A stretch of 64,000 nucleotides of DNA from IMGVR_UViG_3300005529_000001:186001-250000, one strand, 5' to 3'; counted from the first letter of the stretch, positions 1,186 to 61,749 are shown. Notes: a model not told the origin generated them from the sequence alone. Program-made: numbers and translations.

Positions 1186-1192
1186 ATACTTA
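1186..1192 (+). promoter_or_regulatory. Putative phage late promoter ATACTTA
   Basis: 7 nt upstream of ATG 1200, no SD; motif recurs before structural genes. Confidence 0.6.
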
Positions 1193-1199
1193 GAGAGTC

Positions 1200-4100
1200 A
1201 TGAGGGTCAGTCTGGGCGTCCTGAGGGACTACGTCTCCAACCTGTTGGTTGAGAATCGCATCGATGATGCACGTGAAAAATACCCCGACATCGAAGAGGA
1301 TGTCTTCCAAAACCTCGTCGCGAACCAACCCGGCGGGTCGAACAACAAGTACCTGATGTGGTCAGCCAAGCAGGTTGACGACGAGGTAATGCCTGAAGAG
1401 GTCATCATGGCCATCAGGTTGTTTCACGACAACGTTCACCGTCTCAAGCAAAAGGACATCAACCAGTACGAGAGCGTCGAAGCCCTCGACACCGCCATTG
1501 ACGAGCTCCAGAAGAACAAGAGCAAGAGCCAAGAAGCCAAGCAAGCGAAGGCTGACACCCAGGTCATCTACAACGACGACAACTGGCTCGTTGTCCGCCC
1601 GTACACTGCTGACGCATCATGCAAGTACGGCGCAGGTTCAAAGTGGTGCATCTCGGCCACTGCATCTCGCAACTACTTCAACTCGTACTCAGAGACCAAC
1701 AACAAGTTCTACTTTGTCATCGACAAGAAATCAACTAGCAACACGCCCAACTCAAAGTTCGCTATCGCTATCGTTGCAGCGGGCTTGGCTGCCGCCGGTC
1801 GCGAGATCCAGGTCTACAACGCCTCCGATAGCTTGGTGTCTCTGAACACCGTAGCTAGCGCCGTCGGTAGCAAGTGGCCTGAAATCTGGGAAAAGATCCA
1901 AGCTCACGTCGCAGCAAACCCGAAGACCCGTGAGGTCGAAGACGCTGAGAGAGCGACTGAAGAGCATGTTGCTGCGTTGTTGAAAGGCGAGAAGCTTAGC
2001 GACCAAGCGATGAAGAAGGTCGCCAAGAGCGGCAAGCTATCAAACCAAGTCATCAAGAAGATCCTCGGACGTTACGAGAACTACACGGGACCCACCGATT
2101 ACCGTGATGAACGACAGGACATCATGAACTCGTTGTCCAGCCGCGCCAGTGAGATGGAATCTGAAGGGGCGATGGCTGTATTGAAGTGGATCTCAGAGAA
2201 CAGCGCCAACAGCTATTGGCGTACTTCCTACCTCGAACGCATGTTGGCAGCCGCTCCCTTCAAACCAGAAGACTTCCGTGAGATCGCTAAGACTAACGAT
2301 GAAGAGATCCTCGCTAACATCTTTAGTAACCCAGCAACTCCTGATGACGTAAAGCGAGTGATCTCTGATGCTGCAATGCGTTTCGTGTCGGAGTCAGCTA
2401 CCCGAAAAGTTTACTGGGAGCTCATCAAGTCGGGTGCCATCACCAAAGAGCAGATGGCACACGCGATGGAGATGGATAACAAGAGGGGCTCATACAGGTA
2501 CCTGACAAGCCAGATCCTCAACCATCCTGAAGACGTTCGCATGGAACCCGAGTTGGTCAAGATGTTAACCATCAACAACGCAGGAGAGTTCAAAAACCTG
2601 TTGCGGATCCCGAACGTCCCACACGATTTTGCTGTCAAGATCCTCAGCAAGCTGATGAGCAGCGAGAGCCTGAAGAAATACGACATGCTCGAGTTGCTCC
2701 GGACAACACCGTTGGGTCCGAAGCAGATCGAGAAGCTGTGGGCTGACTGGCCCCAAGCAACCGTCAGGACAGCGTTGCTACAAAACCCTGGGATCGGTGA
2801 GGGGAACGCTAACAAGTTCGCCAAAAGCAAGAACAGCGCGTACCGTTTTTCGGTTGCACACAACACCATCACTCCAGTTGATGCGCTCAACACACTCTCC
2901 AAAGACGAGTCAGTCTCAACCAGGTCAGCTGTCGCTGCTAACCCCAAGACATCACCCGAGACGCTGTACACGCTAGCAAAGGACCAAGCTGTTGCGGTCA
3001 GAGCGAGCGTCGCTAGCAACGCATCGTCACCGACCAACCTTGTACGTGCTCTGAAACGAGACTCAGACGACTTTGTCAGGAAAGCTGCTCGGAAGACGCT
3101 CAAAGCTTTGGACGTGACAGAAGCTTACATCGGGATGGCGATGGGCATGCGTGGTTTGCTCGTTGAAGAGCTGACCGATGATGATGTCACGCCTGACATC
3201 ATGAACCCAAGCTGGCGTGACATCATTCCTAGCACCATTGACAAGGAAGAGTTTGTCGCGGTCTTTCTGTTGCAGAACAATGGTAGCGCAACGCGAGAAG
3301 AGATCACCAAAGCGTACAAGGATTGGATGGGCAGCGCTGGTGGAGCGGGCGAGCTCTGGAAGACAAACAAGTGGAGTGACCAGATCATCCGCGGCATCAT
3401 GTCTCAGGGTAAGGGCTGGTTCTGGTCGCCTCCAGGCATCAACAAAGGTGCTCTGTTTCGTCTGACGCCAGCAGGTGCGAGCGCAGCTTTGGACATTATC
3501 AGGAAACTCGCTCACCTCACGAACCTATCTTCTCCCGTACAGATCACGTCTGCCAAGGCTCGACCAGGAAAGACGTACTTTGTCAAGGGCGCTGAAGAAG
3601 CCCTTGACGTCACGGGCATGGAGAAGGGTGACCTTGAGGTCGAAGAAGTTGCAGCAAACTACAACAACGAGCCCATCAAGACTGATGGGAAATACACGAA
3701 GCTGTCACCAAACCGCAGCTGGCGACAGAAGCGCCGCCAACGCAGCGTGAAGATGTTCAAGTACACCTCCCCAACAGGGGAAGTGAAGTACACTCGAGAG
3801 CTTCCCAAGGTCTCCGTCCCCAACAATGCCAAGGTACAGTTCATCAAGACATTCCACGGCCAGGCGACGAATGACAGGTATTCCACCAGCGAACCCAACC
3901 GAGCGATCGTCAAGTACAACGACAAGTACCTGCTTGTCAAGTTCCCGATGTGGGCAAAAGAGGGTGGTGCTGTTCCAGACAACTCCGAAAAGGAGACAAA
4001 CGTACCGCCGCCCGTCAGGAAGTCTCCTCCACCACGTGAGCTGACGGGCGAACCCGCCGCTGCACCAGCACGAACTGGTGGGGGTGAAGCTCCCGCAGCT

Positions 4101-4313
4101 CCCCGTGGACCCAAAGTCGGTTACAAGATCTACGGCCGCCACCGTGGGGCTCCCGCTCACACGCGTCTGAAGGGCCAAGCTTACGCTGCACCTACAGACA
4201 CCCAGTTCTCACCCGGAGAGCAAGCGACCATCCAGGTCGGTGCTGATGGCAAGCTGAAGGTCAAGAAAGTGGCTGGCGATCACGAACAGACGTGGGACCC
4301 CGTCGAGGGTTGA
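1200..4313 (+). CDS. Large multidomain protein with LRV/HEAT-like helical repeats and shared N-terminal motif; candidate virion internal protein
   Basis: N-term MRVSLGVLRDYVSNLLVE; YGAGSKWC domain; ~24-aa repeats VAHNTITPVDALNTLSKDESVSTRSAVAANPKTSPETLYTLAKDQAVAVRASVASN. Confidence 0.75.
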   Translation: MRVSLGVLRDYVSNLLVENRIDDAREKYPDIEEDVFQNLVANQPGGSNNKYLMWSAKQVDDEVMPEEVIMAIRLFHDNVHRLKQKDINQYESVEALDTAIDELQKNKSKSQEAKQAKADTQVIYNDDNWLVVRPYTADASCKYGAGSKWCISATASRNYFNSYSETNNKFYFVIDKKSTSNTPNSKFAIAIVAAGLAAAGREIQVYNASDSLVSLNTVASAVGSKWPEIWEKIQAHVAANPKTREVEDAERATEEHVAALLKGEKLSDQAMKKVAKSGKLSNQVIKKILGRYENYTGPTDYRDERQDIMNSLSSRASEMESEGAMAVLKWISENSANSYWRTSYLERMLAAAPFKPEDFREIAKTNDEEILANIFSNPATPDDVKRVISDAAMRFVSESATRKVYWELIKSGAITKEQMAHAMEMDNKRGSYRYLTSQILNHPEDVRMEPELVKMLTINNAGEFKNLLRIPNVPHDFAVKILSKLMSSESLKKYDMLELLRTTPLGPKQIEKLWADWPQATVRTALLQNPGIGEGNANKFAKSKNSAYRFSVAHNTITPVDALNTLSKDESVSTRSAVAANPKTSPETLYTLAKDQAVAVRASVASNASSPTNLVRALKRDSDDFVRKAARKTLKALDVTEAYIGMAMGMRGLLVEELTDDDVTPDIMNPSWRDIIPSTIDKEEFVAVFLLQNNGSATREEITKAYKDWMGSAGGAGELWKTNKWSDQIIRGIMSQGKGWFWSPPGINKGALFRLTPAGASAALDIIRKLAHLTNLSSPVQITSAKARPGKTYFVKGAEEALDVTGMEKGDLEVEEVAANYNNEPIKTDGKYTKLSPNRSWRQKRRQRSVKMFKYTSPTGEVKYTRELPKVSVPNNAKVQFIKTFHGQATNDRYSTSEPNRAIVKYNDKYLLVKFPMWAKEGGAVPDNSEKETNVPPPVRKSPPPRELTGEPAAAPARTGGGEAPAAPRGPKVGYKIYGRHRGAPAHTRLKGQAYAAPTDTQFSPGEQATIQVGADGKLKVKKVAGDHEQTWDPVEG

Positions 4314-5034: not shown

Positions 5035-5246
5035 TCACCAGGCCGGCAATACGATGGGTGCTCAGGATGGCGCCGGTCCATCCCGTGCTCGACGCAAAAT
5101 AATTCATGACAAAGTTTGCACTCATCACCGTAAGTGTGATGGAGGTTATGATCGTTGGGCGTGTTTCGCAGCGGCATCTCACATTGGGGACACTTGTACG
5201 TGGACGGACTAGATTGCGGAACGATTATCGGTGGCACCCACATCAC
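5028..5246 (-). CDS. Small Cys/His-rich zinc-finger protein
   Basis: CPQC...CKLC-x4-CVEH-x5-H pattern; coupled to dnaE stop. Confidence 0.55.
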   Translation of the reverse strand: MMWVPPIIVPQSSPSTYKCPQCEMPLRNTPNDHNLHHTYGDECKLCHELFCVEHGMDRRHPEHPSYCRPGEW

Positions 5247-8200
5247 GCGATCTCCTTCACCTTGTAAGCGCTGGTCGCAAACCCATAATCGTCCCGGCGG
5301 ACCTCAGCCGCCATCAGCTTGAAGGGCTCGTACAGGTCCTCTCGCCCCCACACCGTGAGGCGGACTGGCTTCCCGACCGGGCCCGTGACAAACGCTTGGA
5401 TGTACCCCTTCCCCTTCTTGGTCTTTTTCTGGAGCCCGGCGGTGGGCTTGCCACCCTTCTTACCCGCCGCCAGCACGGTGACGAACCAACAGAACCTGTT
5501 GTCGCCATGTTCCAGGTCTTCGATTGGGATGACTCCCATCTTGTCAAGCTTGCTGAGCATCGCCTGCTCAAACATCTGGGTCGGGTCCGAAGTGCCGAAG
5601 TAAAAGGCGTTGAACTCAACCCGTTCACGGTTCGTCCACTCGTCTCGGGCGTCGGTCTCGGCGAGGGCTCTCGCCAGCTCGTAAAAGTTCTTGCGCCCCT
5701 CGTGCGGGTCCTTCTTGGTTGACCGTCGGATCAGGGCCGCGTGTTCACGGACACGCTCGACCATGATGCCCGTGCCCTTCTTTTTCTCAACGGTGTCGGT
5801 GTACTCACCCAACAACGTTTCGTGCATGTGCTTGTACGACTTGAAGACCTTGTCCTCACCGATGCAGCCGACTGACTCGAAAGCGCCGATCTTGATGAGA
5901 GCTTCCAGCGCCTTCTTGTTGAACTTGCTGGGCCGCCAGGTTCCATCCTCGTTCCACAGCATCTCTTCTATGCTGTTGATGGGCCGCATCTGGATTATCT
6001 CCTCGACCGCTGACTCCCCCACCCCCTTCACCGACGTCATCGATGGCATCAGCTTCTTGCCTGGCAACACCGTCCAACCCAGGCCAGCATGGTTGATGTC
6101 GATCGGGACGATGGTGTAACCCAGGGCCCGTGCTTCACCAAATGCTTTGGCACGCTTGACGGGCGTCGTTGAGTACGCTTCAAGGTAAGCCGATAGCCAT
6201 TGTTCCTCGTAGTATGTCATCAGCCAGGCACACCAGAATGAATCGATAGCATACGCCACCGCGTGGGCCTTGTTGAAGCCGTAACCGGCAAAGTAGAGGA
6301 TCTTGTCATACAGGTTGTTGGCGACCTTGTCGGTGTAACCGTTCTTGATGCAACCTTGGACGAACCCGTCACGGGTCTCTTGTGCTGCTTTCTTTGCTGC
6401 CTCGCCGCCGGAGATCGACCGTTTCATGATGGCGCGGCGGACCTCATCGCACTTGTCCTTCGGGAAGCCAGCCACCTTCTCGGCGAGCTCCATGACCTGC
6501 TCCTGGAAGATGATGCAGGAGTTGGTCTTTTTCAGGATGTCATTGATGCGATGGTCACCCCACTCGAGCTCCTTTCCATCGTTCTTAGCCTCGAGGTACA
6601 GCTTGTCAACGTGAGCTGCCAACGGGCCCGGCCGGTAGATGCTGGTCAGGGTCGCGATGTCGATGATGCTCTTTGGCTTGGCCTTGACGAACAGGCGTTG
6701 CGCGCCTTGACTCGTCAGCTGGAAGATGCCTCCCCACTTCGCCTTCTCGTAAACTTCGTAAGGTTTGGGATCGTTGAAGTTGACCCTTGACGGATGAAGG
6801 TGTTCCTCGTACCATGCTTTGACATCGTCAAAAGCGTGGGGCTTGCCTTCCTTGATGAGGATCAGCTCGATCGTCCGCTCGATGAGTCGCAGAGTTTCAA
6901 GACCGAGCAGGTCATACTTGATGAACTCACCGATCTTCTCAAGGTGCTTGTAGTTGACGCCCTCGACCCAGGGTGATTGCGGTTCACGCTTGCCACCATC
7001 GCCCTTCGACGTCACGAGCGGCATCTTGTTGGGAAGGTCGTCGGCGATGAGAACGCCACCAGCGTGCCGACCCAATGACCTGTTCTGCTTGAACAGGATC
7101 TTGATTGACTCAGCCACCACGGGATTTTTGTCAATGAAAGACCTGAACGACGGTGACACGGGCGTGTTACATGACTCAGTGCAACCCTGACAGACTGACT
7201 TCGACACAGCGGTCTTGGGCGCCTTGCAATGGAAACCCATTGCCTCGTCATAGGTGAGGACGAACAGGTTCTTGTCATCGCCCTCCTTCATTGTTGCCTT
7301 GCGGACCTCGTCCTCGACTGACCGGGTCGCTGCATTGGTCTCCTCGAAGGAGACACCGTAAAACTTGCCGATGTCCTTCACCAGCGTCTTCAGCTTGAAA
7401 GTGTTGTAGTTGGAGATAGGAACAACGTTCTCCCAACCGAAGAAGCCCCGAAGCTGCTCCAGTACCTTGTCACGGTCAGCGAGGTCAGTGTCAATGTCAG
7501 GCGCGCCTTTGCGATAGACGCTAAGGAAACGGGCGAATGGCAAGTCCCAAAACAGAGGATCGAGGTCGGTGATGTAGAGGACGTAGGCGACCAACGAACC
7601 ACCGCCGGAACCACGACCGGGTCCGCAGAGGCACACCTTCCGCGCCAGCTCCATGATCTTCTGGTACGAGATGAAGTAGTCAGCGTTCTTCATCTGCTTG
7701 ATGACACCGAGCTCTTCTTTGATGCGATCGATATACTCGGGTCTGTCTTGCAAGCCACGTTTCCGCATACCGTCCATGCAGAGCTTGACCAGGTGATTGA
7801 AGGACGGCGTCCCCTCGGGGATCAGGAGCTTGTTGGGAAACTTGGGTGACCGATCGGGCGGAACCTCACCGATGACCTGGTGAGCGATGTCATGGGTCCG
7901 CTCGATCGCATCGGCGATCAAGTCGTCATCATAGAAACCCGTCCCATCCTTGGAGATGCAATACTCATCCCACATCTGCTGGGCGTTCTTCGGGTACAAC
8001 TCACACTTGAGCTGCTCTTTGGACTTGGGAAGAGAGTCAGCGTTGATCTCGGTGTAGTTCATCCAGCCGAGTTTCTTGTAGAGCTCACGGTCCTTCCACC
8101 GGTCAGGGTTGAAGTAGTGAGCATCACCAGTGACTATCAACTGTTGGGTCTTGTTGTTGCGACGGCAGAACTCGATGATGGCACGGTTCACCAGGTTCTG

Positions 8201-9405: not shown

Positions 9406-9424
9406 GATTGAATCCTCCGTCAAG

Positions 9425-9431
9425 TAACTAT
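9425..9431 (-). promoter_or_regulatory. Putative late promoter ATAGTTA
   Basis: Same motif as before the tail tube gene. Confidence 0.5.
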
Positions 9432-11595: not shown

Positions 11596-11602
11596 ATACT
11601 TA
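11596..11602 (+). promoter_or_regulatory. Putative late promoter ATACTTA
   Basis: 6 nt upstream of ATG 11609. Confidence 0.6.
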
Positions 11603-14094: not shown

Positions 14095-14101
14095 TAAGTA
14101 T
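14095..14101 (-). promoter_or_regulatory. Putative late promoter ATACTTA
   Basis: Upstream of SD and ATG 14074. Confidence 0.6.
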
Positions 14102-14705: not shown

Positions 14706-14892
14706 GGAGACTAAATACCACGATCTCCCTGTCTAGACGCCGACGAGCACGGCGGAGACCCTTCTTGCGTCCCCACCGCCAGCTCGCGTGGCGTTTCTTG
14801 TCACGGTAGCACGGGACCATGCCCGCGTGGAGACCGTCCCAACCGTGCATGCTGGGACGCTGAGCGCGGATAACGCTAGCCGCCGCGCTCAC
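14665..14892 (-). CDS. Possible small basic protein
   Basis: GTGA-coupled to HNH gene, Arg-rich; overlaps next gene. Confidence 0.35.
   Translation of the reverse strand: MSAAASVIRAQRPSMHGWDGLHAGMVPCYRDKKRHASWRWGRKKGLRRARRRLDREIVVFSLHENDMGQGPAAAC
14712..14718 (-). promoter_or_regulatory. Putative late promoter GTATTTA
   Basis: 6 nt upstream of ATG 14705, no SD. Confidence 0.55.
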
Positions 14893-15873: not shown

Positions 15874-16841
15874 GCCATCGCAAAGTCAAACGATACCATG
15901 CCGGTGTCAGCATCCATGGTGCACATCGCGCCGACGGGCACCGGGATCGTCCAGTCACCGTGAGAGAAGCTATAACCGTACACGCAAGGTGGTCCCTCGC
16001 TCAGGTACTGCACCAAGACGTCATCGATGCTTGGGACTTTGCCGTCACGCTTCTGGGGTACGTCGCAGAACTCCCCGACCACGATGCCCGCGATCTTGTC
16101 AAGGACTCCGGCGAGCCTACAATGGATCAGGAGACGAGCGATCACCTCTCCGTCCTTGTGAACGTCCTCGATGAAGAGGATCGCGCCTTCAAAATCAGGA
16201 CAGAATGGCGAACCGAGCAACGTGCAAAAAGTGTCAAGGTTGCCACCGATGATGTGGCCCCGGGCTTTTCCGGGTGATACCGTCCTGGGCATGTATTGGT
16301 TGATGGTGAAGGGCTTCTGCTCCCATGGCTCGGGCGACATCATGAACTGCGTCGCAAACCGCAACGACTCTTCGTCGGTGTAACGAAAGTGTTGGCCCTC
16401 GTCAACCCGGATCGCTGGGTACTGCCCGTTGATGCTGATCAAGCCCGCTCCGGCAAGGATGCCGTTGTTTAGAGCGGTGATGTCGCTGAGGCCGATGAGT
16501 GCACGTTGGCTCTGGCGGATCGCGCCATAATCAAGGTACGGGAGCAGCTCACCTGAACCCATGCCGCCGAGACAGGTATAGATGCCCTCGATTCCTGGCG
16601 CGGTGAATGCCCACATCAGCTCCTCCACCCGGTCCATCAAGGGGGCCGCGTGGATGTCTAACGTGTTGAGGGTCTTGACATTCTTGCCCAAGACGGGCTC
16701 TAAGCCACATTCCTTGATGATATCAAGGCCAGCAACGAGCTCGTCAGTCCGGATGGGCGAAGCAGGAGCAACAATGGCTACACGCGCACCAGGGTTGATC
16801 CTCTTGGGAGCGATGAAGGGCATCGACCCTAAGTAGGTCAC
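15870..16841 (-). CDS. LD-carboxypeptidase (S66 peptidase, LdcA/MccF family)
   Basis: IVAPAS, GLSDITAL (Ser), GGNL, LFIEDV (Glu), FSHG (His). Confidence 0.92.
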   Translation of the reverse strand: MTYLGSMPFIAPKRINPGARVAIVAPASPIRTDELVAGLDIIKECGLEPVLGKNVKTLNTLDIHAAPLMDRVEELMWAFTAPGIEGIYTCLGGMGSGELLPYLDYGAIRQSQRALIGLSDITALNNGILAGAGLISINGQYPAIRVDEGQHFRYTDEESLRFATQFMMSPEPWEQKPFTINQYMPRTVSPGKARGHIIGGNLDTFCTLLGSPFCPDFEGAILFIEDVHKDGEVIARLLIHCRLAGVLDKIAGIVVGEFCDVPQKRDGKVPSIDDVLVQYLSEGPPCVYGYSFSHGDWTIPVPVGAMCTMDADTGMVSFDFAMA

Positions 16842-26029: not shown

Positions 26030-26066
26030 GCCCGAACCTTAATCCAGACCAGGACGGGTTTTTCAC

Positions 26067-32998: not shown

Positions 32999-33005
32999 TA
33001 AGTAT
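32999..33005 (-). promoter_or_regulatory. Putative late promoter ATACTTA
   Basis: Heads the three-gene motif operon 31802..32979. Confidence 0.6.
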
Positions 33006-40865: not shown

Positions 40866-40876
40866 GGTGTTTCCTT

Positions 40877-42192: not shown

Positions 42193-42199
42193 TAAATAG
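42193..42199 (-). promoter_or_regulatory. Putative late promoter CTATTTA
   Basis: 4 nt upstream of ATG 42188. Confidence 0.5.
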
Positions 42200-44328: not shown

Positions 44329-47307
44329 TCATCCCTTCTGGCCGGGAACTTTGGCTGACAAGCTAGCGACCCACTGGTCGATCTGCTGGGCACCCTCCCA
44401 GACACCGTACGCGTCAGCGTAACCGAACTGCCACGTTGTCTCGTACTTACCCGGCCCGATCGTGTGCGACAGGCCCGTGACGATGTAGATGTTGTCAAGC
44501 GTCGTGCCCGTCTGAAAATCAATGAAGTACATCTGGGCCATGGTCGCGAGCGGGTTTCCGATCGTTGTCATGTTGAGCATCGCTGGGATAACGCGGACTG
44601 GAAAGCCACGTTCGCCACCGCCAGCGGGATGAGCATCGTTCCTGATGTTCATCGTCCGTTGCATCTGGACAGAAGACACCCGGGGGTCCGCTTTGGATGC
44701 TAGGGCGGCGGAGACGATGGTCGTTCCGTTCGCACCGAACCTGATGGTCGGCACCATCTTTGAGACCAGGTCTTTTGCTTGCTGGTAGCTCGCGGGTTGG
44801 GCGATGATGCTGGCGTTCGTTTTGGGATCCTGTGTCACCTGGCTACCCGGCGCTGCTTGCGCATACGCTTGCGCAAACTTCTGGATCTGCTGGCCGTCAG
44901 ACGGTGACAGCTGCTTGTTTGCCGCGGGGGAGGCCACCTGGATGAAGTCCCGGTTGGCGCTGTCACGTAACAGCGTCGCCGCGCCCTTGTATGGGTTCAG
45001 CTGCTTGTCATAGATGTGAATGCGCATGATGCGCTTGACACCCGCAGCGTTCGGCCCCTTGTTGGCTTCGATCGCAGTGTTCTTGGCCGAGTAACCGATC
45101 AACTGCAAGATGTCGTTTTGGGTGCCCGTGTTATCACCCGGTCGCTGGTGTGCACACTCGATGTACATCTCGATCATCGGTTGCTTGAACGTCCCGTATT
45201 TCAGCTGCCACTTGTCCAGCTCAGACGGGCTGTCACCCTGTCTGTCCTTGACTCTAGCTTCAGGGTTGTTAGAGTCGTAGGGCTGGTAAGCACCCTTCAT
45301 GCCATACCCGAGGTTGCGGGGGTCGAGGAACTGAGCGTTGATGACCAAACCCAAGAAATCTTCCAGGGTCATGTTCTGTCCGCCAGTCCTGATCACATTC
45401 TCTCGGTATTGGTCAGCAAACATGCCCATGTCAATTGGGAACGAAGCAATCGATGTGCTAGAAACAGGCCCACACTGTTCATTCATTTGGTAAAAGAAGA
45501 TCTGGAGCTCGTCATGGCTCCCGAGCTGTGCTGCGCTTGTCAAGTTACGACCCGCAAACACCGAAAACAGCTTTCCAAATGAAACAACGCCCTTCCTGAG
45601 TGTCTGGTTGGAATTCTTGGGCGCAGTAACCCACGCATCTAGAGCTTTTTTCAAGTCGCTTGATCCATCAATCGTCGATTGCTTTTTCAGGGTGGGCAAG
45701 AACGGATCGGGTCCCGTGTAGACCTCCTCAAACATCTTGTTGACCGTGTTATCGACGTTCGTGGGGTTGTAAGCAAACTTTGTTGATGGGTCAACTGACG
45801 CATAGTTCTTCGCATACTGTTGCATCGTCGTGATCAGCTGCGTAGCTTTACCCTGGTCAACACCAGGTGTCTTCGATAGGATCGTAGCTAGCTGTATGAT
45901 CGCTGCGTCCAAAGCGTTCTTTGACAGGTTGGGACGTTGGCCCTGTTCCATCGCATCAAGGACCATGTAAGCACGGCTGTCATGGTTAAGGCCCGCTCCC
46001 ACGCCACCGTTGCCTGACGGGTCTAATCCCGTTGCAACGAACAGCTCTGCGATCTGCTCGCCAACCTGTCTCGCTGACTTGAGCAAAAACGTTTGGTCGT
46101 TATTGTTGTCAGCGATCTTTGATTGACGCATCTCGTTGACACCTTTGGTGAACAGCTCCAACGTCAGAGTGACCTGGCCCACGTTGTCAAACGAAAAATT
46201 GCTGTTGACGATCCCATAGGCTTCTCGCATCAACATGTTGTTGTTGATGTACTCAAAGTATGGGTTATCTTTGGGATCGCTCCTCACCGGAGCTCGCCAC
46301 CCATATGTCAGCCAGACAGTAACACCAGTGTAAACCCTGGGTCTGATCAGGTCGCTGATCTCACTCAGACGTGACCGATCATGGATCTTGATCTGCAATG
46401 TTGCCTTCTTGTAGGTGTAGAAACCTGCACCAGCTGGAACGATGTTGATTGTCGCGTGTTCTAGCGTAGCAAACGGCCGAGTCGGATCGAGCACATCAGC
46501 GTAACGAGCACCCCCAGTAGCTTTCCCAACAGTATTGGGTGATGGGTTGTAGAGCGTCTGGGGAGATGTGAACATCTCCATCCCAGCAAAATCGACTTCA
46601 GGTGAACCGGGTTGGTTTCCGGACGGGTTTGTCGCACCAAGAAGGTGAGCACCTATCATAGCATCGTTCGCCGTCTTGGGGTTAGCCGCGTTGCTGGTAT
46701 CAACAGCTCCGATCAGGAACTTCAACAGTCCAGCAGTCTGGAGCTGGTTGGTGACCCGAGCAGGACGTGATATCATGAACTCAGCTTGTAGGAACGGGAC
46801 TAGCTGTGCCAAGACAGTGTTTGGCATGTTGTTGAGGAACGGTTCAGCACGATGGCAGTTCCTCGTTTGTGGGCTAAAGAACGGCGTGCGGCTGCAGATC
46901 AGTGCAACGTCAAGCGACACGGACCCACCCGTGGGTAATGGGAAATCAGCGCCGATGATCTGTTGCAATGCATTGCCCAGCTTTGCCGTCGCGCCCTGCG
47001 AGTCAACGTAGCTGTCTTGGTCCGAGCTGGTTCCCAGGTTGGGGATGGGTCCTTGCGTAGAATAAAACGACAGGTAATCAGACAAGACTTCCGCGCTTGA
47101 TTTTGTTCCCAAAGCACCGATCTGCGCGATGATGTCAGCAGTGCTGTACACGCCACGACCGCTGTTCTCAAGGACTTGTAACAGTTGCTTGAACACGTCT
47201 TGGTTTTGGGTGTTGGGATCTTGCCCGAGGCTCGGCGTCACCGTCCCAAGCATGTCGCTGGGCGTAAATGAGTTTAAGATCCCTTCGATGGTGGTGAAGT
47301 CAGCCAT
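44329..47307 (-). CDS. Large structural protein, putative baseplate hub (gp27/VgrG position)
   Basis: 992 aa; synteny after LysM/gp53-like gene; WLTYGW...SNFSF and YIVTGLSHTIGPGKYETT segments. Confidence 0.55.
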   Translation of the reverse strand: MADFTTIEGILNSFTPSDMLGTVTPSLGQDPNTQNQDVFKQLLQVLENSGRGVYSTADIIAQIGALGTKSSAEVLSDYLSFYSTQGPIPNLGTSSDQDSYVDSQGATAKLGNALQQIIGADFPLPTGGSVSLDVALICSRTPFFSPQTRNCHRAEPFLNNMPNTVLAQLVPFLQAEFMISRPARVTNQLQTAGLLKFLIGAVDTSNAANPKTANDAMIGAHLLGATNPSGNQPGSPEVDFAGMEMFTSPQTLYNPSPNTVGKATGGARYADVLDPTRPFATLEHATINIVPAGAGFYTYKKATLQIKIHDRSRLSEISDLIRPRVYTGVTVWLTYGWRAPVRSDPKDNPYFEYINNNMLMREAYGIVNSNFSFDNVGQVTLTLELFTKGVNEMRQSKIADNNNDQTFLLKSARQVGEQIAELFVATGLDPSGNGGVGAGLNHDSRAYMVLDAMEQGQRPNLSKNALDAAIIQLATILSKTPGVDQGKATQLITTMQQYAKNYASVDPSTKFAYNPTNVDNTVNKMFEEVYTGPDPFLPTLKKQSTIDGSSDLKKALDAWVTAPKNSNQTLRKGVVSFGKLFSVFAGRNLTSAAQLGSHDELQIFFYQMNEQCGPVSSTSIASFPIDMGMFADQYRENVIRTGGQNMTLEDFLGLVINAQFLDPRNLGYGMKGAYQPYDSNNPEARVKDRQGDSPSELDKWQLKYGTFKQPMIEMYIECAHQRPGDNTGTQNDILQLIGYSAKNTAIEANKGPNAAGVKRIMRIHIYDKQLNPYKGAATLLRDSANRDFIQVASPAANKQLSPSDGQQIQKFAQAYAQAAPGSQVTQDPKTNASIIAQPASYQQAKDLVSKMVPTIRFGANGTTIVSAALASKADPRVSSVQMQRTMNIRNDAHPAGGGERGFPVRVIPAMLNMTTIGNPLATMAQMYFIDFQTGTTLDNIYIVTGLSHTIGPGKYETTWQFGYADAYGVWEGAQQIDQWVASLSAKVPGQKG

Positions 47308-50859: not shown

Positions 50860-51129
50860 TCAGGCAATAGAACCAGAGGTCGGTGTCTGGCTCTGGTTGC
50901 TAAGTACGCTCTGCTTCTCAACCAATGCCTGGCCAAGTTTAGCAGCGAACTCGGGGTCGTTTTCTGCCCGTTCGATGGCGGGACCCAAGATGTCAGCAAA
51001 CGGGGCCACAAAGCCCTCCACGAGCTTTTGGATGGTTTTTCGTTCGCCAGCGTTCTGGGCACGGCCCAAGGCTTCGCGGTATGCCGGGTCTTCTCTCAAG
51101 CGCTTGAGAAACTCGTCCCTCGTTTTCAT
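50860..51129 (-). CDS. Hypothetical protein
   Basis: 89 aa; TAGGAT -10 lies 6 nt upstream. Confidence 0.6.
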   Translation of the reverse strand: MKTRDEFLKRLREDPAYREALGRAQNAGERKTIQKLVEGFVAPFADILGPAIERAENDPEFAAKLGQALVEKQSVLSNQSQTPTSGSIA

Positions 51130-55212: not shown

Positions 55213-55227
55213 GACCCTAAATAGGCC

Positions 55228-55512: not shown

Positions 55513-56374
55513 AGTTGACCCCGATTGGCATCGAGACCTCCTCTTCGTGACCACAAGACGCACACGTCACTTCCTGGCGCATGATCATTCCTGGCTCATT
55601 GTCACGAATGTAGTTTCGCAAAGCCAGAGAGTCACGAGCGGGCATCATGCGGACGAACGCCGCGATCTTGGCTCGGTCTTCGATGTTATCGACAGACTGG
55701 ATGCAGTGAAGCAGGTTTGATGTCACTGACGTCTCGTTCTGAGACAGCGCCAGCTTCTTCTGCTTCTCCTGCAAGGCAGTGATCTGCTCTTCGTCACGGC
55801 CCGTCAAGAACTTGAAGCGGACGGTCTTCTTGCTCATGGGCAGCTGGAACTCAAACAGGTTCATCCCCTCTTGCACGGGGGCGATGCTCAGTCGCTTGAT
55901 CGGCAGCTGGGCGAGGTTGAACGCTCTGGGTCCCTTCGTCTCGCACTCACCGCACTCGAGCTCCGCGTCATAATCAGCGCCGTACATGGTGATGCGGATC
56001 GCGACCATCAACGCATAGCGATCGCCGATGACCATGTCAATCGGATCGATCGCTTTGTTGACAAGGCACGACTTGATCAGCTCGGTGATGACCGTCCCCT
56101 TCTTCAGGAGGGCTCGGCTCGTCAAGATGTCTTCTTCACGAGCGGTACCAGCCCGGATCTCAACGAGCTCAACGCCGTGTAGCGGGTGGTTGGGCGGGTA
56201 GACGCGGCCTGCAGACGGCAACGGGACCGTCTCAACCGGGATCTCGATGCCGAAGTCCGCCTTGAACTTCTCAGCCTGCGAGAGAGCCTGGACGCCCGCT
56301 TGGACTGCGCCCGGGGGCGGTGCTTGTGTTGATGCAGAAAAGACTTGGTTACGCTGCTCGCGTTCCTCAGACAT
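55487..56374 (-). CDS. Tail assembly chaperone / T4 gp26-like baseplate hub assembly protein
   Basis: VPLPSAGRVY, TAREEDILTS, GDRYALMVAIRITMYG, two CxxC, ends PIGVNFLWP; AGGAG SD. Confidence 0.75.
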   Translation of the reverse strand: MSEEREQRNQVFSASTQAPPPGAVQAGVQALSQAEKFKADFGIEIPVETVPLPSAGRVYPPNHPLHGVELVEIRAGTAREEDILTSRALLKKGTVITELIKSCLVNKAIDPIDMVIGDRYALMVAIRITMYGADYDAELECGECETKGPRAFNLAQLPIKRLSIAPVQEGMNLFEFQLPMSKKTVRFKFLTGRDEEQITALQEKQKKLALSQNETSVTSNLLHCIQSVDNIEDRAKIAAFVRMMPARDSLALRNYIRDNEPGMIMRQEVTCASCGHEEEVSMPIGVNFLWPAAQR

Positions 56375-56417: not shown

Positions 56418-56424
56418 TAAATGT
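56418..56424 (-). promoter_or_regulatory. Possible late promoter variant ACATTTA
   Basis: Upstream of chaperone gene. Confidence 0.35.
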
Positions 56425-57551: not shown

Positions 57552-58109
57552 CCGGTGACAGGAGAACCAGCGGCGCCCGCACCTGGCCGGAGTGCCAGGA
57601 ATCAGAACTGCAGAACGGCGTTGTCGAAGCGCAGCGTCAGGCTGATCTCAGCCAGGGTACCGTCTTCATAGGTGAGCTCGCCGAAGTTAGCTTCGGTTAT
57701 CCAGGCGCCCTTGATGTCCCAGAGCTCGACAACGGTGCCGACCGGGTCAAGCAGCTTCAGCTGGATGTCACGCTTGTAGAAGTCAGCGTAGCCAGCGCGG
57801 CCCGAGACAGTCTCCAGGGTCAGGCGGATCCACTCCATGACCTGCTGCGCGCCCGAGGGAGCGATCGGGTCATAGAGCGTCACAGCCAGGGTATTGAACT
57901 TCGTCAATCCCGCAAGGTAACGACGGAAGTTGATGAACGGCACCTCGACCTCTTCCGTGGTCACGGTCGGGCGTGCAGTGGTCTTCATGATGTAGGCGTC
58001 GATTCCCTCGATCATGAGCACCCAACGGTTCTTCCGCTTGGGTTCAAACTTGTTTGGAAGCATCGACGTTACGTCGAGTGTCTCAGCCATTTTTCTCTCC
58101 TGTCACCGG
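57552..58109. repeat. 14-bp perfect inverted repeat flanking tail tube gene
   Basis: ccggtgacaggaga (57552-57565) vs tctcctgtcaccgg (58096-58109). Confidence 0.9.
57602..58090 (-). CDS. Tail tube protein (T4 gp19-like)
   Basis: FEPKRKNRW, RPTV..EEVEVPFIN..RYLAG..F..L.VTLYD, LLDPVG..VELW...GAWI...NFGEL.Y. Confidence 0.9.
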   Translation of the reverse strand: MAETLDVTSMLPNKFEPKRKNRWVLMIEGIDAYIMKTTARPTVTTEEVEVPFINFRRYLAGLTKFNTLAVTLYDPIAPSGAQQVMEWIRLTLETVSGRAGYADFYKRDIQLKLLDPVGTVVELWDIKGAWITEANFGELTYEDGTLAEISLTLRFDNAVLQF

Positions 58110-58118
58110 GTTCGATCG

Positions 58119-58125
58119 TAACTAT
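58119..58125 (-). promoter_or_regulatory. Putative late promoter ATAGTTA
   Basis: Upstream of tube leader and SD. Confidence 0.55.
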
Positions 58126-58564: not shown

Positions 58565-58578
58565 GAAGCTACCCTAAA

Positions 58579-61500
58579 TCACCCCTGTTGCGAGATGTTG
58601 TTCGTCACAACGAAGTCCAACGAGACGTACTCGAGCGACTTGGTGGGCTGGACGAAGATCTTCCCGCGGATGGTGTTGTTCTCGATGTCGAGCTGCGTCG
58701 TTGTCGAGGAGTCGATGACGACCTTGAAACGCTGCAGGCCAGCCTGGGCCTGGATCTTCTGCAAGACGGGGGTGACCGCCGCAGAGAACCGAGCCAGGGT
58801 TGCGTCACGGTTCTGCTCGAACAGGATGGTGTTGGCAATGTCACGGACCTGGCGACGGATCTCGATCAGGAGGCGCCGCACGTTGACACGGTCAAGGGCC
58901 GAAGCAGCTTGCTGGAGCGTCTTCTGTCCCCAGACCACCACGCCACCCTTCGGGTTGGTGCCGCCCGAAGCGTTGCCCGGGAAGGCGACCAACGGGTTGA
59001 CGTTGGCGTCGTAAAGGGCGTCCATGTTGGTCTTCGACAGCTTGACACGAGCCTCGAGGGTCGTCTGCAACGCACCACGAGTGAAGCCTGCGGGAGCGAA
59101 CCATGGGTGACCGACCGCGTCGTTGAGAGCGAGAGCGCCCAGGACGGCGACAGACGGGGGAGCAACGACGTTGTTGCCCGTGTTCGGATCGGGCATCACG
59201 ACGTCTGGGAAGTACGCTGCACCGAAGCTGCTGTTCACTGACCGCAGCAGGAAGTTCTGCAGCGTGTATGTCACGCTGGGCAGCTGCGTGTCGGTGGTGA
59301 CCAGCTGGTCGTTGTTATCATACTGGTCGATGTCCATCAAGAACATGCAATCAAAGCGCTGTTCACAAGCCGCCAATGCTGCGTCAGTGACGACCGGGTG
59401 CCTGATGCCGGGAACGGCGAGCAACATGATGTCCACGTTCGTGGTGTCGCTCATGATGTTGAGGCCAGCGTTGTAAGCTGACACTGTCGATCCGAGGTTG
59501 AAACCACGGTTCGATGCATTCATGTCATCTTCAACGGCGGTGTTCGTCAGCTGGCGCTGGTCGGGATCAAACAGGTTGGTCCCATCGAAACCTCCCTGGA
59601 CCATGAACGTCCACTTGAGGAAGCGCCTGTTGGCCTGGACGAAGTCGCTCGGCAACAGCGCACGGGTTGCAGCGGAGTTGTTCGTTGCAATGTTCCCGTT
59701 GCGGACATAGACTGCGTTCACCCACTGTGTCGGGTCGGCGATGCCAGCCGAGCTGGTGACGACCTGGATGTTCAGCAAGCTGAAGGCGTTGAAGTTGAAC
59801 CTGTCGGCGTCCATGATGGCGCCGTTGACGGTGGGTGCTCCGGGCTTGCCACCGTTCTCATACCCAATGCGGACGTTCTGCGCATCGGTGCGGAACTCGG
59901 GCAAGAACTTTGCAAAAGCATGCATTGACTGGTTTGCCAGCGTGCTCAAGTTCGGGGTTGACACACTAGCAACGTGCTCAAACTGCATGCCCCAGTACAG
60001 CAAGGGGTTGACCTGCAGCTTGGCGCCAGAGCCCTGCGTGATGTTCTGCCGCAGCGGGACCGGCGGCTCGATGACTTGGCTTGCCCAGGTGGTGCTGTTC
60101 AGCGCGATCTCGCTAGAGCTACCGCTGATCAACGAGTTTGCAGGCTGTGCCAGGCAACCGCCAGCTGTCACCAAGTGATGGATGCCACGAAGACCGACAG
60201 GCAACACCGTCGGATCGACCTGGCCGAGGTCAGTTGACGTATCCATCTCGATGCGGATGTAGTTCGAAGCGTTCGGGTACTGGCCATCAACGACCAGCTT
60301 CTGTGCGGTCGGTCCACGGTCAAAGTCAAAGAACGCGTGGGCGTCACCGATGACAGCAGCGATGTACCGTGAGTCGCTTGGGTTCAGCGTCAGGCCGCGG
60401 AACTGCTCGAGGTAGACGGGTGCTCCGTCGGTGTCACCCCACTGGCGGACGACCAGGTCAAAGGTGCCGTACTGGTTCAACGGATCGGTCGAGAGCGCGA
60501 TGTTCTCGATGCTGATCTTGTAAAGCCTGCTAACGTTGAAGCCGTCATCAAGGGCGTGGACGCGGAACAGGTTGTGGGGCTTGCCGCCGAACGGTTGTGA
60601 GACAACCCACGGTGACGTTGCGTGCTCAAACCGGTCACGGAAGTCCTCATAGTCGGGGACGGTCGATGAACCGTTGTCATACTGCAACGAGCTGGTCAAG
60701 ATGAACGCTGCAAACTCAGCGCCCGGAACGTTTGCAGACGCTGCGCCGGCGCCGAACGAGGAGCTGACGAGACCCGATCCGGTGACCACTGCCTGCGCAG
60801 GGTGGATATCATAGTGGCTGTAGAGGTAGTGACCTGCCTGTTGCAGGTTGTCAGGGTTGGTGTTCAGGACGTTCGCAAAGTAGTTTGGCGACGTCATGTC
60901 GAACGACGCGGTGATCACGTTCGGGAACAGTGGGTTCGTTCCCATGAGACCGTTAAGGAAGAGGACGAAGTCTTGCTTGGCGATCGACCCAGCGAACAAC
61001 GTCACGTCACCGATGCTTGCACCGTTGTTGTCAGTCGCTACTGCAGTTGCAGGCGGAGCAACGTTGGTCTGCGCTCCCGTGAGCGGGAACGAAGCTGACA
61101 GCGTCAGGATGACGCCTGAGGCGGCCATGATCATGCCGCGGACGATCGGGACACACGAACCGGACGTTGACGTTGTCTGGATGCCCGCAGACGAGAAGAA
61201 CGTTGAGCCGGCCGACTCGGACATGAAAGCGCCCAAGAAGTACGTACGACCCGACAGGTAGCTGGTCCGGCCTGGTTGGACGGGAGTTGCTCCCGTCGAT
61301 GACGTCGGGTTAGCATAAGGGTTTGGGCTCAGCTGACCATTGTTGTTGGGATCAGGTTCCTTTTCGCCGACTGTCCAGCCTGCGCCTGTCACGCCACCTG
61401 TTGCACTGTTGGGACCCGAGGGTTGGCTAGCGAGACCCTGCCGTGCTTGTCCCTGGCCAACGCCGAGCACCCTGACGTAGGTCAGCGCTTGCGCGTTGCG

Positions 61501-61725
61501 GAGCCACTCTGTCACCGCAAGCGGGCCAAACTTCCGGCCATCAGTCTGACCAAACTTTCCATAGAAGTCGTTGACCAGACCAACAGTGACAGGAACGAAT
61601 GCTGGGCCCTTCAAAGAAGTGCCAACAACGCCTGCTGGGGTGCCTGTCGGGGTGATCGCTAGCGGTTGAGAGAGATCGATCTCTGTCGTCGATACTCCTG
61701 GCGCGCCGAACTTGAGCTGTGACAT
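58579..61725 (-). CDS. Tail sheath protein 1
   Basis: FGAPGVSTTEIDLS N-term; WFAPAGFTRG, VVVWGQKTLQ..SALDRVNVRRLL, LEYVSLDF. Confidence 0.95.
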   Translation of the reverse strand: MSQLKFGAPGVSTTEIDLSQPLAITPTGTPAGVVGTSLKGPAFVPVTVGLVNDFYGKFGQTDGRKFGPLAVTEWLRNAQALTYVRVLGVGQGQARQGLASQPSGPNSATGGVTGAGWTVGEKEPDPNNNGQLSPNPYANPTSSTGATPVQPGRTSYLSGRTYFLGAFMSESAGSTFFSSAGIQTTSTSGSCVPIVRGMIMAASGVILTLSASFPLTGAQTNVAPPATAVATDNNGASIGDVTLFAGSIAKQDFVLFLNGLMGTNPLFPNVITASFDMTSPNYFANVLNTNPDNLQQAGHYLYSHYDIHPAQAVVTGSGLVSSSFGAGAASANVPGAEFAAFILTSSLQYDNGSSTVPDYEDFRDRFEHATSPWVVSQPFGGKPHNLFRVHALDDGFNVSRLYKISIENIALSTDPLNQYGTFDLVVRQWGDTDGAPVYLEQFRGLTLNPSDSRYIAAVIGDAHAFFDFDRGPTAQKLVVDGQYPNASNYIRIEMDTSTDLGQVDPTVLPVGLRGIHHLVTAGGCLAQPANSLISGSSSEIALNSTTWASQVIEPPVPLRQNITQGSGAKLQVNPLLYWGMQFEHVASVSTPNLSTLANQSMHAFAKFLPEFRTDAQNVRIGYENGGKPGAPTVNGAIMDADRFNFNAFSLLNIQVVTSSAGIADPTQWVNAVYVRNGNIATNNSAATRALLPSDFVQANRRFLKWTFMVQGGFDGTNLFDPDQRQLTNTAVEDDMNASNRGFNLGSTVSAYNAGLNIMSDTTNVDIMLLAVPGIRHPVVTDAALAACEQRFDCMFLMDIDQYDNNDQLVTTDTQLPSVTYTLQNFLLRSVNSSFGAAYFPDVVMPDPNTGNNVVAPPSVAVLGALALNDAVGHPWFAPAGFTRGALQTTLEARVKLSKTNMDALYDANVNPLVAFPGNASGGTNPKGGVVVWGQKTLQQAASALDRVNVRRLLIEIRRQVRDIANTILFEQNRDATLARFSAAVTPVLQKIQAQAGLQRFKVVIDSSTTTQLDIENNTIRGKIFVQPTKSLEYVSLDFVVTNNISQQG

Positions 61726-61742
61726 CTAGTGCCTCTGCGCTC

Positions 61743-61749
61743 TAAGTAT
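61743..61749 (-). promoter_or_regulatory. Putative late promoter ATACTTA
   Basis: Upstream of sheath 1 start. Confidence 0.6.

What the first reader, a model, noticed from the sequence alone, without database searches (positions are those of the whole stretch)
1186..61749. Phage-specific late promoter motif NTA[CGT]TTA defining a dispersed late regulon
Seen on the coding strand upstream of starts: ATACTTA (1186, 11596, 14095, 32999, 61743), ATAGTTA (9425, 58119), GTATTTA (14712), CTATTTA (42193, 55218), and looser TGATTTA (58575), ATACATA (57468), ACATTTA (56418). All precede tail genes, N-terminal-motif genes or the holin candidate; none was noticed before replication enzymes. Several are only 4-7 nt from ATG with no SD. 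Established: T4 late promoters are a -10-only element (TATAAATA) read by sigma factor gp55. Inference: a different -10-only late consensus read by a phage sigma factor encoded outside this window.
Basis: partly seen in the sequence, partly recalled or inferred. Interest (0 to 1): 0.6.

Follow-up and report, generated by a model that had tools for sequence, protein, structure and literature searches.

The report
Late-gene promoter motif of a jumbo phage
A short DNA word, (C/G)(A/C)TA(C/T/G)TTA, sits just upstream of the capsid, tail and lysis genes of this 369-kb uncultured T4-like phage and its relatives, and is most likely the promoter that switches on late genes through a phage-encoded sigma factor.

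Summary
The window holds 13 TA[CGT]TTA hexamers, no more than chance (9.6±3.0). But 12 of them lie 4-46 nt upstream of a same-strand start codon. Genome-wide (369,475 bp), 48 of 91 sites lie in the 50 nt before a start, against 5.5±2.3 in shuffles and 4 for the reverse complement. TACTTA is the most enriched upstream hexamer.

The element is S-M-T-A-B-T-T-A, with nothing conserved upstream to -55. Its modal distance to ATG is 5-6 nt. More than 100 sigma-70-type TAnnnT boxes in this genome sit 6 nt from their start codon, so these transcripts look leaderless.

Annotated targets are major capsid, two tail sheaths, tail tube, baseplate, adaptor, endolysin and LD-carboxypeptidase. None is a replication gene. 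The same words top the enrichment lists in three relatives (GC 47-59%). In 202 orthologue pairs, motif presence is concordant (odds ratio 72, p=2e-18).

The genome has no RNA polymerase gene. It has two sigma genes, both outside the window: a gp55-like factor and an RpoD-like factor lacking the region 4.2 recognition helix. I favour the gp55-like reader.

No RNA data exist. Promoter function and late timing are inferred. This is a new variant of the T4-type late promoter.

The parts
1187..1192 (+). TACTTA (cgaTACTTA), 7 nt before the ATG at 1200 of a 1037-aa LRV-repeat protein with N-terminus MRVSLGVLRDY; no room for an SD
9425..9430 (-). TAGTTA (ccaTAGTTA), 19 nt before an ATG at about 9405 that is preceded by GGAGG; small protein of unknown function (ORF 9130-9423)
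11597..11602 (+). TACTTA (ccaTACTTA), 6 nt before the ATG at 11609 of a 319-aa protein of unknown function; leaderless geometry
14095..14100 (-). TACTTA (ccaTACTTA), 20 nt before the ATG at 14074 of a 394-aa protein, with AGGAG between; the G002 orthologue also has TACTTA
14712..14717 (-). TATTTA (ggTATTTA), 6 nt before the ATG at 14705 of a 125-aa protein (N-terminus MKTTWGKVRQL)
16830..16835 (-).
32999..33004 (-). TACTTA (ccaTACTTA), just downstream of the ribonucleotide reductase gene; 10 nt before a GTG or 19 nt before an ATG preceded by AGGAG; ORF 32440-32988 of unknown function
42193..42198 (-). TATTTA (gccTATTTA), 4 nt before the ATG at 42188 of a 76-aa protein; the G002 orthologue has TACTTA
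50901..50906 (-).
55218..55223 (-). TATTTA (gccTATTTA), 5 nt before the ATG at 55212 of a 97-aa protein; the G002 orthologue has TACTTA 5 nt before its ATG
56418..56424 (-). ACATTTA, probably a degenerate member, 43 nt before the T4-type baseplate gene 55487-56374; the G002 orthologue has a perfect TATTTA at the matching place
58119..58124 (-). TAGTTA (cgaTAGTTA), 28 nt before the ATG at 58090 of the gp19-like tail tube gene, with GGAGAG between; the orthologue has TATTTA
61743..61748 (-). TACTTA (cgaTACTTA), 17 nt before the ATG at 61725 of the 1048-aa tail sheath gene; the orthologue has gaTACTTA followed by a similar leader
44444..44449 (+). TACTTA antisense inside the 992-aa gene, with no start downstream; taken as a chance occurrence and not part of the regulon
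58565..58581 (-).

Best explanation
The motif is the -10-region box of this phage's late promoters. Host RNA polymerase core, carrying a phage-encoded sigma factor, recognises the 8-bp word S-M-T-A-B-T-T-A without any -35 contact. It starts transcription about 5-7 nt downstream.

At about half of the sites that start point is the A of the ATG, or a base or two before it, giving leaderless mRNAs. At the other sites a leader of about 10-40 nt carries a GGAG ribosome-binding site.

About 50-55 such promoters drive the capsid, tail, baseplate, connector and lysis genes, plus a family of genes of unknown function.

The most likely reader is the gp55-like sigma at genome 340,740-341,660. The system would then be a diverged version of T4 late transcription with a different box sequence.

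Shown: placement, orientation, spacing, target functions, conservation, and the presence of the sigma genes. Inferred: that it is a promoter, that it acts late, and which sigma reads it.
For: 1. Placement. 48 of 91 genome sites lie 50 nt or less upstream of a same-strand start, against 5.5±2.3 in shuffles and 4 for the reverse complement. In the window it is 12 of 13.

2. Geometry. The motif-to-ATG gap peaks at 5 and 6 nt (12 and 11 sites). In the same genome TAnnnT boxes with a TGAAA -35 and a GTGG extension sit exactly 6 nt before 105 start codons; 145 sit at 5-7 nt, against about 35 at control distances. The motif therefore occupies the -10 position of a leaderless promoter.

3. No conserved base from -55 to -3.

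4. Targets are major capsid, two tail sheaths, tail tube, baseplate wedge, head-tail adaptor, head closure, endolysin and LD-carboxypeptidase. Ten large genes behind TAnnnT boxes are ligase, exonuclease, polymerase domain, HNH, CCA-adding enzyme, GroEL and the like, with none structural. The motif is absent from the 60-100 kb cluster of 39 strong sigma-70-type promoters and dense in 140-310 kb.

5. Conservation. TACTTA, TAGTTA and TATTTA (ATACTTA, ATAGTTA) top the upstream enrichment in relatives G002, G004 and G005, of GC 56, 59 and 47%. TABTTA-N4-7-ATG is strand-biased in four relatives. Among 202 orthologue pairs with G002 (mean 53% identity), the motif is in both 24 times, one only 15, neither 163; odds ratio 72, p=2e-18. 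The flanks are unalignable, and C, T and G interchange at position 3.

6. Reader. No T7-like RNAP or beta' domain was found. The gp55-like ORF matches phrog_234, 'late sigma transcription factor', at E=3e-6 and 6e-5. Its model's best structural match is T4 gp55 in 7d7c_F: Z 10.6, rmsd 3.4 Å over 116 residues. All top Foldseek hits are sigma factors. It is a conserved core gene, 59-91% identical in 80 relatives.

7. In the phage collection its homologues occur only in the phages with the nearest capsid proteins. Two of these, Flavobacterium phage immuto and Microcystis phage Mel-JY01, lack any Sigma70_r2 gene. Both show the T-variant ATATTTAT upstream of genes in one orientation, 19:1 and 21:2, including the scaffold-capsid operon.

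8. The box fits no canonical sigma-70 register. With TA at -12/-11, position -7 is an invariant A. Shifted by two, position -11 is A, C or G. The RpoD-like factor keeps a near-canonical region 2.3-2.4.

9. T4 has about 50 late promoters: an 8-bp box at -13 to -6 with no -35 (PMC2988020).
Against: - There is no transcript data. Only three DNA metagenome runs hold the sequence, so start sites and timing are untested.
- Gene calls and start codons are my own and home-made.
- The gp55 assignment rests on a weak profile hit. Its structural Z is within 1 unit of generic sigma domain-2 matches. hhalign against the single T4 sequence gave 1% probability. A profile search of PDB sequences missed gp55.
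- T4's partners are not detectable: no gp33, no gp45, no DnaN C-terminal domain.
- A second phage sigma without the -35-reading helix is an obvious alternative reader of a -35-less promoter.
- In immuto, ATATTTA is also part of early promoters that have a GTTGC upstream box. AT-rich intergenic DNA inflates such words. The cross-phage argument for gp55 is therefore only moderate.
- Many targets have no known function. About 35 motif copies lie in coding DNA.
Confidence: 0.75

Rival explanations
1. Same promoter function, different reader. The RpoD-like phage sigma (genome 33,359-34,174; regions 1.2-4.1 present, recognition helix of 4.2 absent) reads the box. The gp55-like protein would then do something else, for example read another class or act as a co-factor.
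For: The protein has Sigma70_r2 (E=3e-22) and r3 but no r4. It stops after the first helix of the 4.2 helix-turn-helix. That truncation is conserved in all 28 relatives examined. A sigma that cannot read a -35 fits a -35-less promoter. Residues that in E. coli sigma-70 contact -12/-13 and the TG extension differ (T440G, R441Q, E458T by my alignment to the E. coli sequence from memory).
Against: Its region 2.3-2.4 is near-canonical (FSTYATWWIKQAI). That predicts an A(-11)/T(-7) type box, which the motif does not offer in any register. It fits better the many TAnnnT promoters with a weak -35 before replication and metabolism genes. Immuto and Mel-JY01 have the gp55-like gene and an ATATTTAT upstream word but no Sigma70_r2 gene.
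Confidence: 0.17
2. The word acts at the RNA level. It would be a processing site for a phage or host endoribonuclease (as T4 RegB cuts at GGAG), or a translation signal in polycistronic late transcripts. Cleavage would free mRNAs that begin near the start codon.
For: The motif is strand-specific and lies in transcribed intergenic regions of long same-strand gene arrays. No RNA data exclude it.
Against: The spacing to ATG copies that of the TAnnnT -10 boxes, which come with a -35 and a TG-type extension and are clearly DNA promoters. Distance to the start codon varies from 4 to 46 nt, and a separate GGAG appears whenever there is room, so it is not a ribosome-binding signal. The word resembles the T4 late box (xxTAxxTA), and a gp55-like sigma is present.
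Confidence: 0.05
3. The enrichment is a compositional by-product. AT-rich words are excluded from GC-rich coding DNA and so pile up in intergenic spacers, with no specific function.
For: The window's raw count is at chance level (13 against 9.6±3.0). AT-rich hexamers are generally rare in this 56% GC genome.
Against: Shuffling each upstream zone while keeping its own dinucleotides gives 5.5±2.3 against 48 observed. The reverse complement occurs 4 times in the same zones. Other AT-rich hexamers are far less enriched. There is a sharp distance peak at 5-6 nt. The motif is conserved at orthologous genes while the flanks diverge, and it is the top word in a 47% GC relative too.
Confidence: 0.02

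Closest known systems
Bacteriophage T4 late promoters (TATAAATA at -13 to -6) read by gp55 with gp33 and the gp45 clamp
   Same: Both are an 8-bp box in the -10 region with no -35 element. Both have about 50 copies per genome, before head, tail and lysis genes on either strand. The phage has T4-type capsid (gp23), sheath, tube (gp19) and baseplate genes and a gp55-like sigma. TA is shared at box positions 3-4 and 7-8 (PMC2988020).
   Different: The middle of the box is [CTG]T instead of AA, and A never occurs at that position. The first two positions are S-M instead of TA. No gp33 or gp45 homologue was detected, and the replicase is DnaE-type. The gp55-like protein is longer (306 against 185 aa), with a K/A-rich N-terminus and an extra C-terminal helical domain that overlays sigma domain 4 in full-length sigma matches. 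About half of the promoters abut the start codon.
In-silico late promoter consensus of other T4-related phages (KVP40, 44RR, cyanophage S-PM2; variant in Aeromonas phage Aeh1)
   Same: It is a family-wide -10-only box that drifts in sequence between lineages. Aeh1 differs from T4 at -13/-12, as this phage does (PMC2988020).
   Different: In the published variants named in PMC2988020 only the first two positions of the box change. Here the core itself differs. I found no paper in the held library that reports ATACTTA as a phage promoter. That is not proof of absence.
Group 2 jumbo phages (gp23-type capsid, no RNAP, phage-encoded 'minimal' and RpoD-like sigma factors), Iyer et al. 2021
   Same: The phage has a gp23-type capsid and no RNAP gene. 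It has one minimal or diverged sigma plus one RpoD-like sigma (PMC7824862).
   Different: That group is defined with a family B DNA polymerase and a gp33 orthologue. This phage has a Pol III alpha (DnaE) and no detectable gp33. The review gives no promoter motifs for this lineage.
Sigma-70-type extended -10 promoters giving leaderless mRNAs (common in Actinobacteria and Deinococcus-Thermus; recalled from memory, with PMC4633059 for mycobacteria)
   Same: The -10 box lies 6 nt from the start codon, so transcription and translation start at the same base. This is the layout of more than 100 other genes in this genome.
   Different: The motif lacks the T at -7, the TG extension and the -35 that the genome's sigma-70-type promoters have.

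Membership tests
T4-type late transcription system | Promoter is a short box in the -10 region with no -35 element | tested here: met
   51 aligned sites: information only at -2 to +5 of the box; nothing from -55 to -3
T4-type late transcription system | Box sequence TATAAATA (or the near variants of other T4 relatives) | tested here: not met
   Consensus is S-M-T-A-[C>T,G]-T-T-A. A never occurs at box position 5
T4-type late transcription system | gp55-family sigma factor encoded by the phage | tested here: met
   phrog_234 match at E=3e-6 and 6e-5 over profile positions 7-111. Best structural match is T4 gp55 7d7c_F, Z 10.6. Weak by hhalign, so membership is probable, not certain
T4-type late transcription system | gp33 co-activator | tested here: not met
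   phrog_254: no match at E<=10 in the complete genome. The protein is small and fast-evolving, so a distant homologue could be missed
T4-type late transcription system | gp45-type sliding clamp as activator | tested here: not met
   phrog_223: no match. No DnaN C-terminal domain either. A conserved hydrophobic C-terminal tail, KF(R/K)LF, on the gp55-like protein is unique in the proteome
T4-type late transcription system | Drives virion and lysis genes, not early or replication genes | tested here: met
   Targets. Contrast set. Map along the genome:
T4-type late transcription system | Primary transcript 5' ends a few nt downstream, appearing late and depending on replication | not testable with these tools
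   Only DNA metagenome runs hold the sequence
Canonical sigma-70 (-35/-10) promoter | TAnnnT hexamer with A at -11 and T at -7, plus a -35 or a TG extension | tested here: not met
   The last box base is an invariant A. The bases before TA are S-M, not TG. There is no -35. The genome's true sigma-70-type sites form a separate class
Leaderless mRNA | Transcription starts at, or within 1-2 nt of, the start codon | tested here: inconclusive
   The geometry fits: gap 5-6 nt, no room for an SD, same register as the TAnnnT boxes. No 5'-end data exist

The most novel reading that the evidence does not exclude
This large, mostly uncultured clade of T4-like phages (more than 500 related contigs in IMG/VR) may run late transcription with a single fused factor. 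That factor would combine a gp55-like sigma domain 2 with a sigma domain 4-like C-terminal domain that takes the place of gp33. Its conserved KFRLF tail might tether it to the host beta clamp used by the phage's DnaE replicase, instead of to a gp45 clamp. The phage may also translate well over a hundred of its genes from leaderless mRNAs.
Probability: 0.2. Interest if true: 0.75.

Novelty: new variant of a known kind. Interest (0 to 1): 0.55.

Why it matters
The motif gives a sequence-only way to mark late genes in a widespread clade of uncultured jumbo phages. About 50 genes per genome could be marked, most of them of unknown function. Unknown proteins could then be sorted into likely virion or lysis components and the rest.

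It shows that the T4 late-promoter principle, a -10-only box read by a minimal phage sigma, persists after the box sequence, the replicase and the detectable co-factors have all changed.

It also reveals a phage in which most promoters abut the start codon. That points to a host that translates leaderless mRNAs well, which is a usable clue for host assignment.

Two cultured relatives, Flavobacterium phage immuto and Microcystis phage Mel-JY01, carry the same sigma, annotated only as hypothetical. The idea can therefore be tested at the bench.

Tried and rejected
- Megablast of 6.5 kb against the phage collection found no close relative.
- Search for RNA evidence found only three DNA metagenome runs (soil, mine).
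- The second Sigma70_r2 hit, at about 49 kb, is an aminotransferase-like ORF and was rejected.
- A profile of the gp55-like family against PDB sequences gave only chance kinase hits. hhalign against T4 gp55 alone gave 1% probability. Foldseek E-values were weak. Only the VIA re-alignment put T4 gp55 first.
- Host identification through capsid relatives in bacterial genome bins gave five bins from unrelated phyla, so it was uninformative.
- TAATTA is absent from the genome. The Markov expectation is only 3.1 and G002 has 10 copies, so this is not meaningful.
- I looked for other proteins sharing the KFRLF C-terminal tail, as a possible common clamp-binding peptide. None exists in the proteome.
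- TACTGA enrichment upstream of starts is an artefact of upstream stop codons (TAC TGA). TACCTA and TACGTA include a few likely weak variants, such as genome 29917, whose orthologue has TAGTTA.
- Phage immuto was used to decide between the two sigmas. The test is ambiguous, because ATATTTA is also part of its early promoters, which have a GTTGC upstream box.
- Complex prediction was not used. The host RNAP is unknown, and no binding claim rests on it.

Full report
**Context.** The window is bases 186,001-250,000 of a complete 369,475-bp virus record with direct terminal repeats. It has 56% GC and comes from a soil metagenome. I called 552 genes with a home-made codon-usage caller.

The window carries replication and structural genes:
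- a DnaE-type Pol III alpha (5243-8935)
- a ribonucleotide reductase (33013-35523)
- DnaB (35607-37049)
- a RecA/UvsX protein (39591-40880)
- a T4-type baseplate protein (55487-56374)
- a gp19-like tail tube (57602-58090)
- a 1048-aa tail sheath (58579-61725), and the start of a second sheath gene

The major capsid protein, outside the window, is gp23-like. Its nearest database relatives are Microcystis phage Mel-JY01, Flavobacterium phage immuto and an uncultured 484-kb phage. More than 500 related contigs exist in IMG/VR.

The number of TA[CGT]TTA hexamers in the window is ordinary: 13, against 9.56±3.00 in shuffles. What is not ordinary is where they lie. 12 of 13 are 4-46 nt upstream of a same-strand start.

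Genome-wide, 48 of 91 copies fall in the 50 nt before a start, which is 3.7% of strand positions. Dinucleotide shuffles of those very zones give 5.5±2.3 (maximum 14 of 500). The reverse complement occurs there only 4 times. In an unbiased scan, TACTTA and TATTTA are the two most enriched upstream hexamers and ATACTTA is the top heptamer.

Single-base variants show that T1, A2, T5 and A6 are essentially fixed. Position 3 takes C, T or G, but A was never seen. Position 4 tolerates C or G weakly. The two bases before the hexamer are S then A/C, never T. Nothing is conserved further upstream to -55.

- 56418 is probably a decayed member, because its orthologue has TATTTA.
- 57468 has no support.
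- 58575 belongs to the other promoter class.

**What the surroundings say.** The same k-mer scan turned up a second, larger class: gGTGAAAg, about 15-18 nt, GTGG-TAnnnT, then exactly 6 nt, then ATG. TAnnnT lies 5-7 nt from a candidate start in 145 genes, and at exactly 6 nt in 105. At control distances the count is about 35. Clear -35 (T-G-A-A-A) and extended -10 signals accompany it.

These are sigma-70-type promoters whose start point coincides with the start codon. The genome is therefore built largely around leaderless mRNAs.

The finding's motif occupies the same place. Its distance to ATG/GTG peaks at 5 and 6 nt. Among TA-initial hexamers at 6 nt, 86 end in T and 11 end in A, and the latter are almost all TAYTTA. 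At 5 nt the A-ending ones dominate.

So the observation 'only 4-7 nt from ATG with no SD' is explained by leaderless geometry. The remaining sites are 10-46 nt upstream, with a GGAG in between.

**Which genes?** Targets with a family assignment are:
- major capsid
- both sheath paralogues
- tail tube
- baseplate wedge
- head-tail adaptor
- a head-closure/HNH protein
- endolysin
- LD-carboxypeptidase

The decayed site stands before the baseplate hub gene.

Ten large genes behind TAnnnT boxes were used as a contrast. They are DNA ligase, exonuclease, a polymerase domain, HNH endonuclease, CCA-adding enzyme, epimerase, phosphoesterase and GroEL, with none structural.

Along the genome, 39 of 61 sigma-70-type promoters with a strong -35 lie at 60-100 kb, before small genes. 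The motif has no copy there. It is densest at 140-310 kb, which holds the structural module.

One copy, at 32999, sits right after RNR, before a 182-aa gene of unknown function.

**Conservation.** I fetched three large relatives and repeated the blind scan. The motif words lead the enrichment lists in all three:
- G002 (309 kb, 56% GC): TACTTA, TAGTTA and TATTTA are the top three hexamers.
- G004 (340 kb, 59% GC): TAGTTA and TACTTA are the top two hexamers.
- G005 (324 kb, 47% GC): ATAGTTA and ATACTTA are among the top three heptamers.

The pattern TABTTA-N4-7-ATG is strongly biased to the coding strand in four relatives. In G002 it is 21 against 4, with controls at 4 and 4.

In 202 reciprocal-best orthologue pairs between the window's genome and G002 (mean 53% amino-acid identity), the motif is upstream of both members 24 times, of one member 15 times and of neither 163 times. 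The odds ratio is 72 and p=2e-18. The flanking DNA is not alignable, and C, T and G swap at position 3. This is the strongest evidence that the word is functional.

**Who reads it?** No T7-like RNAP domain and no beta' domain were found. Host RNAP is therefore presumably used. Two sigma-like genes exist, both outside the window.

(a) The first is a 271-aa RpoD-like protein with regions 2 and 3. It stops after the first helix of the region 4.2 helix-turn-helix. This truncated form is conserved in 28 relatives.

(b) The second is a 306-aa protein that matches the PHROG of T4 gp55 at E=3e-6 and 6e-5.
- Its AlphaFold model (pLDDT 79.5) hits only sigma factors in Foldseek.
- On re-alignment, T4 gp55 in the late open complex (7d7c_F) is the best match: Z 10.6, 116 residues, rmsd 3.4 Å.
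- It is a highly conserved core gene.
- In the phage collection its only homologues are in the phages with the nearest capsids, where they are annotated as hypothetical.
- Both sigma genes lie in operons behind TAnnnT-type promoters, not behind the motif.

I favour (b) for three reasons. First, the box fits no sigma-70 register. That would require A at -7, or a non-conserved -11. Meanwhile (a) keeps a near-canonical region 2.3-2.4. Second, T4 sets the precedent of an 8-bp -10-only box with about 50 copies, and the two boxes share xxTAxxTA (PMC2988020). Third, immuto and Mel-JY01 have (b) but no Sigma70_r2 gene. Both show the T-variant ATATTTAT upstream of genes in one orientation, including the scaffold-capsid operon.

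The third argument is weakened by AT-rich backgrounds. In immuto the same word is also part of its early promoters.

T4's partners gp33 and gp45 are not detectable, and neither is a DnaN C-terminal domain. The gp55-like protein has an extra C-terminal helical domain that overlays sigma domain 4 in full-length matches. It also has a conserved hydrophobic tail, KF(R/K)LF, which is unique in the proteome. What these features do is speculation.

**Comparison and novelty.** In how it works, this is a T4-type late promoter. As a family member it passes on box architecture, target genes and a gp55-like sigma. It fails on box sequence and on detectable gp33 and gp45.

Group 2 jumbo phages are known to carry a minimal sigma and an RpoD-like sigma (PMC7824862). 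No promoter has been described for this lineage in the papers I could search. I therefore rate it a new variant of a known kind.

**Limits.**
- There are no RNA data.
- Gene starts are my own calls.
- The host is unknown.
- Many targets have unknown function.
- About 35 copies of the hexamer lie inside genes and are presumably inactive or weak.

None of the operators' special cautions was triggered.

Noticed in passing
genome-wide; in the window e.g. upstream of 25607-26029 (26030-26075), 27700-28389, 19792-20619, 42432-43049, 602-1153: More than 100 genes have a sigma-70-type promoter (-35 gTGAAAg, extension GTGG, TAnnnT) ending exactly 6 nt before the start codon, so most of this phage's mRNAs look leaderless. 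The strongest ones cluster at genome 57-85 kb before small genes, probably the early region.
   Followed up: partly
G000:C1:33359-34174 (-), = L001:1060-1875: The phage RpoD-like sigma factor has regions 2 and 3 but ends after the first helix of region 4.2, so it lacks the -35-reading helix. The truncation is conserved in 28 relatives.
   Followed up: partly
window 1200, 14074, 14331, 14705, 32068, 32436 (gene starts) and at least 8 more in the genome: A gene family of very different lengths (74-1037 aa) shares an N-terminal peptide M-[KR]-[IVL]-[RST]-L-G-x-L-[RK]-x-x-[IL]-x-E. Half of its members start 4-7 nt after the late box. Codons differ between members, so the conservation is at protein level. 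It may be a targeting or packaging signal.
   Followed up: no
window 58579-61725 and 61835-64000 (continues to 65023): There are two tandem tail sheath paralogues of about 1050 aa, roughly twice the size of the PHROG tail-sheath profile they match (496 positions). Each has its own copy of the late box. Both are conserved in relative G002.
   Followed up: no
window 9690-10688, 19792-20619, 37046-38026 upstream regions; also genome 125186, 133899, 337053: A subset of the TAnnnT promoters has cTGAAC(a/t) rather than GTGAAAG at -35. This may be a third promoter subclass before metabolism and replication genes.
   Followed up: no
G000:C1:340740-341660 (+) = L200:1267-2187; NC_055915.1 78174-78872; PP395634.1 158764-159534: The gp55-like sigma of this clade is annotated as 'hypothetical protein' in the cultured phages immuto and Mel-JY01. 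Closer relatives share an extreme C-terminal KF(R/K)LF tail.
   Followed up: partly
NC_055915.1 about 60-76 kb (loci L325): Flavobacterium phage immuto has about 20 near-identical early promoter-leader cassettes (aGTTGC...N...cgtATATTTAGGTATCAATAATTAAAACA, then about 10 nt, then ATG) before small genes.
   Followed up: no
L025-L102 (capsid gene upstream regions of relatives): Upstream of the capsid gene, the block AACCAAC followed by TACTTA is kept in relatives of roughly 48-63% GC. In most lower-GC members (about 40-50%) it is replaced by AACCAAC/AACAAC followed by TTT-rich words such as CAACTTTTTGA. The box may have drifted within the clade.
   Followed up: no
G000:C1:133899-135548 (-): The phage encodes a full-length GroEL chaperonin (phrog_5725, E=2.7e-150) behind a TAGAAT leaderless promoter.
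   Followed up: no
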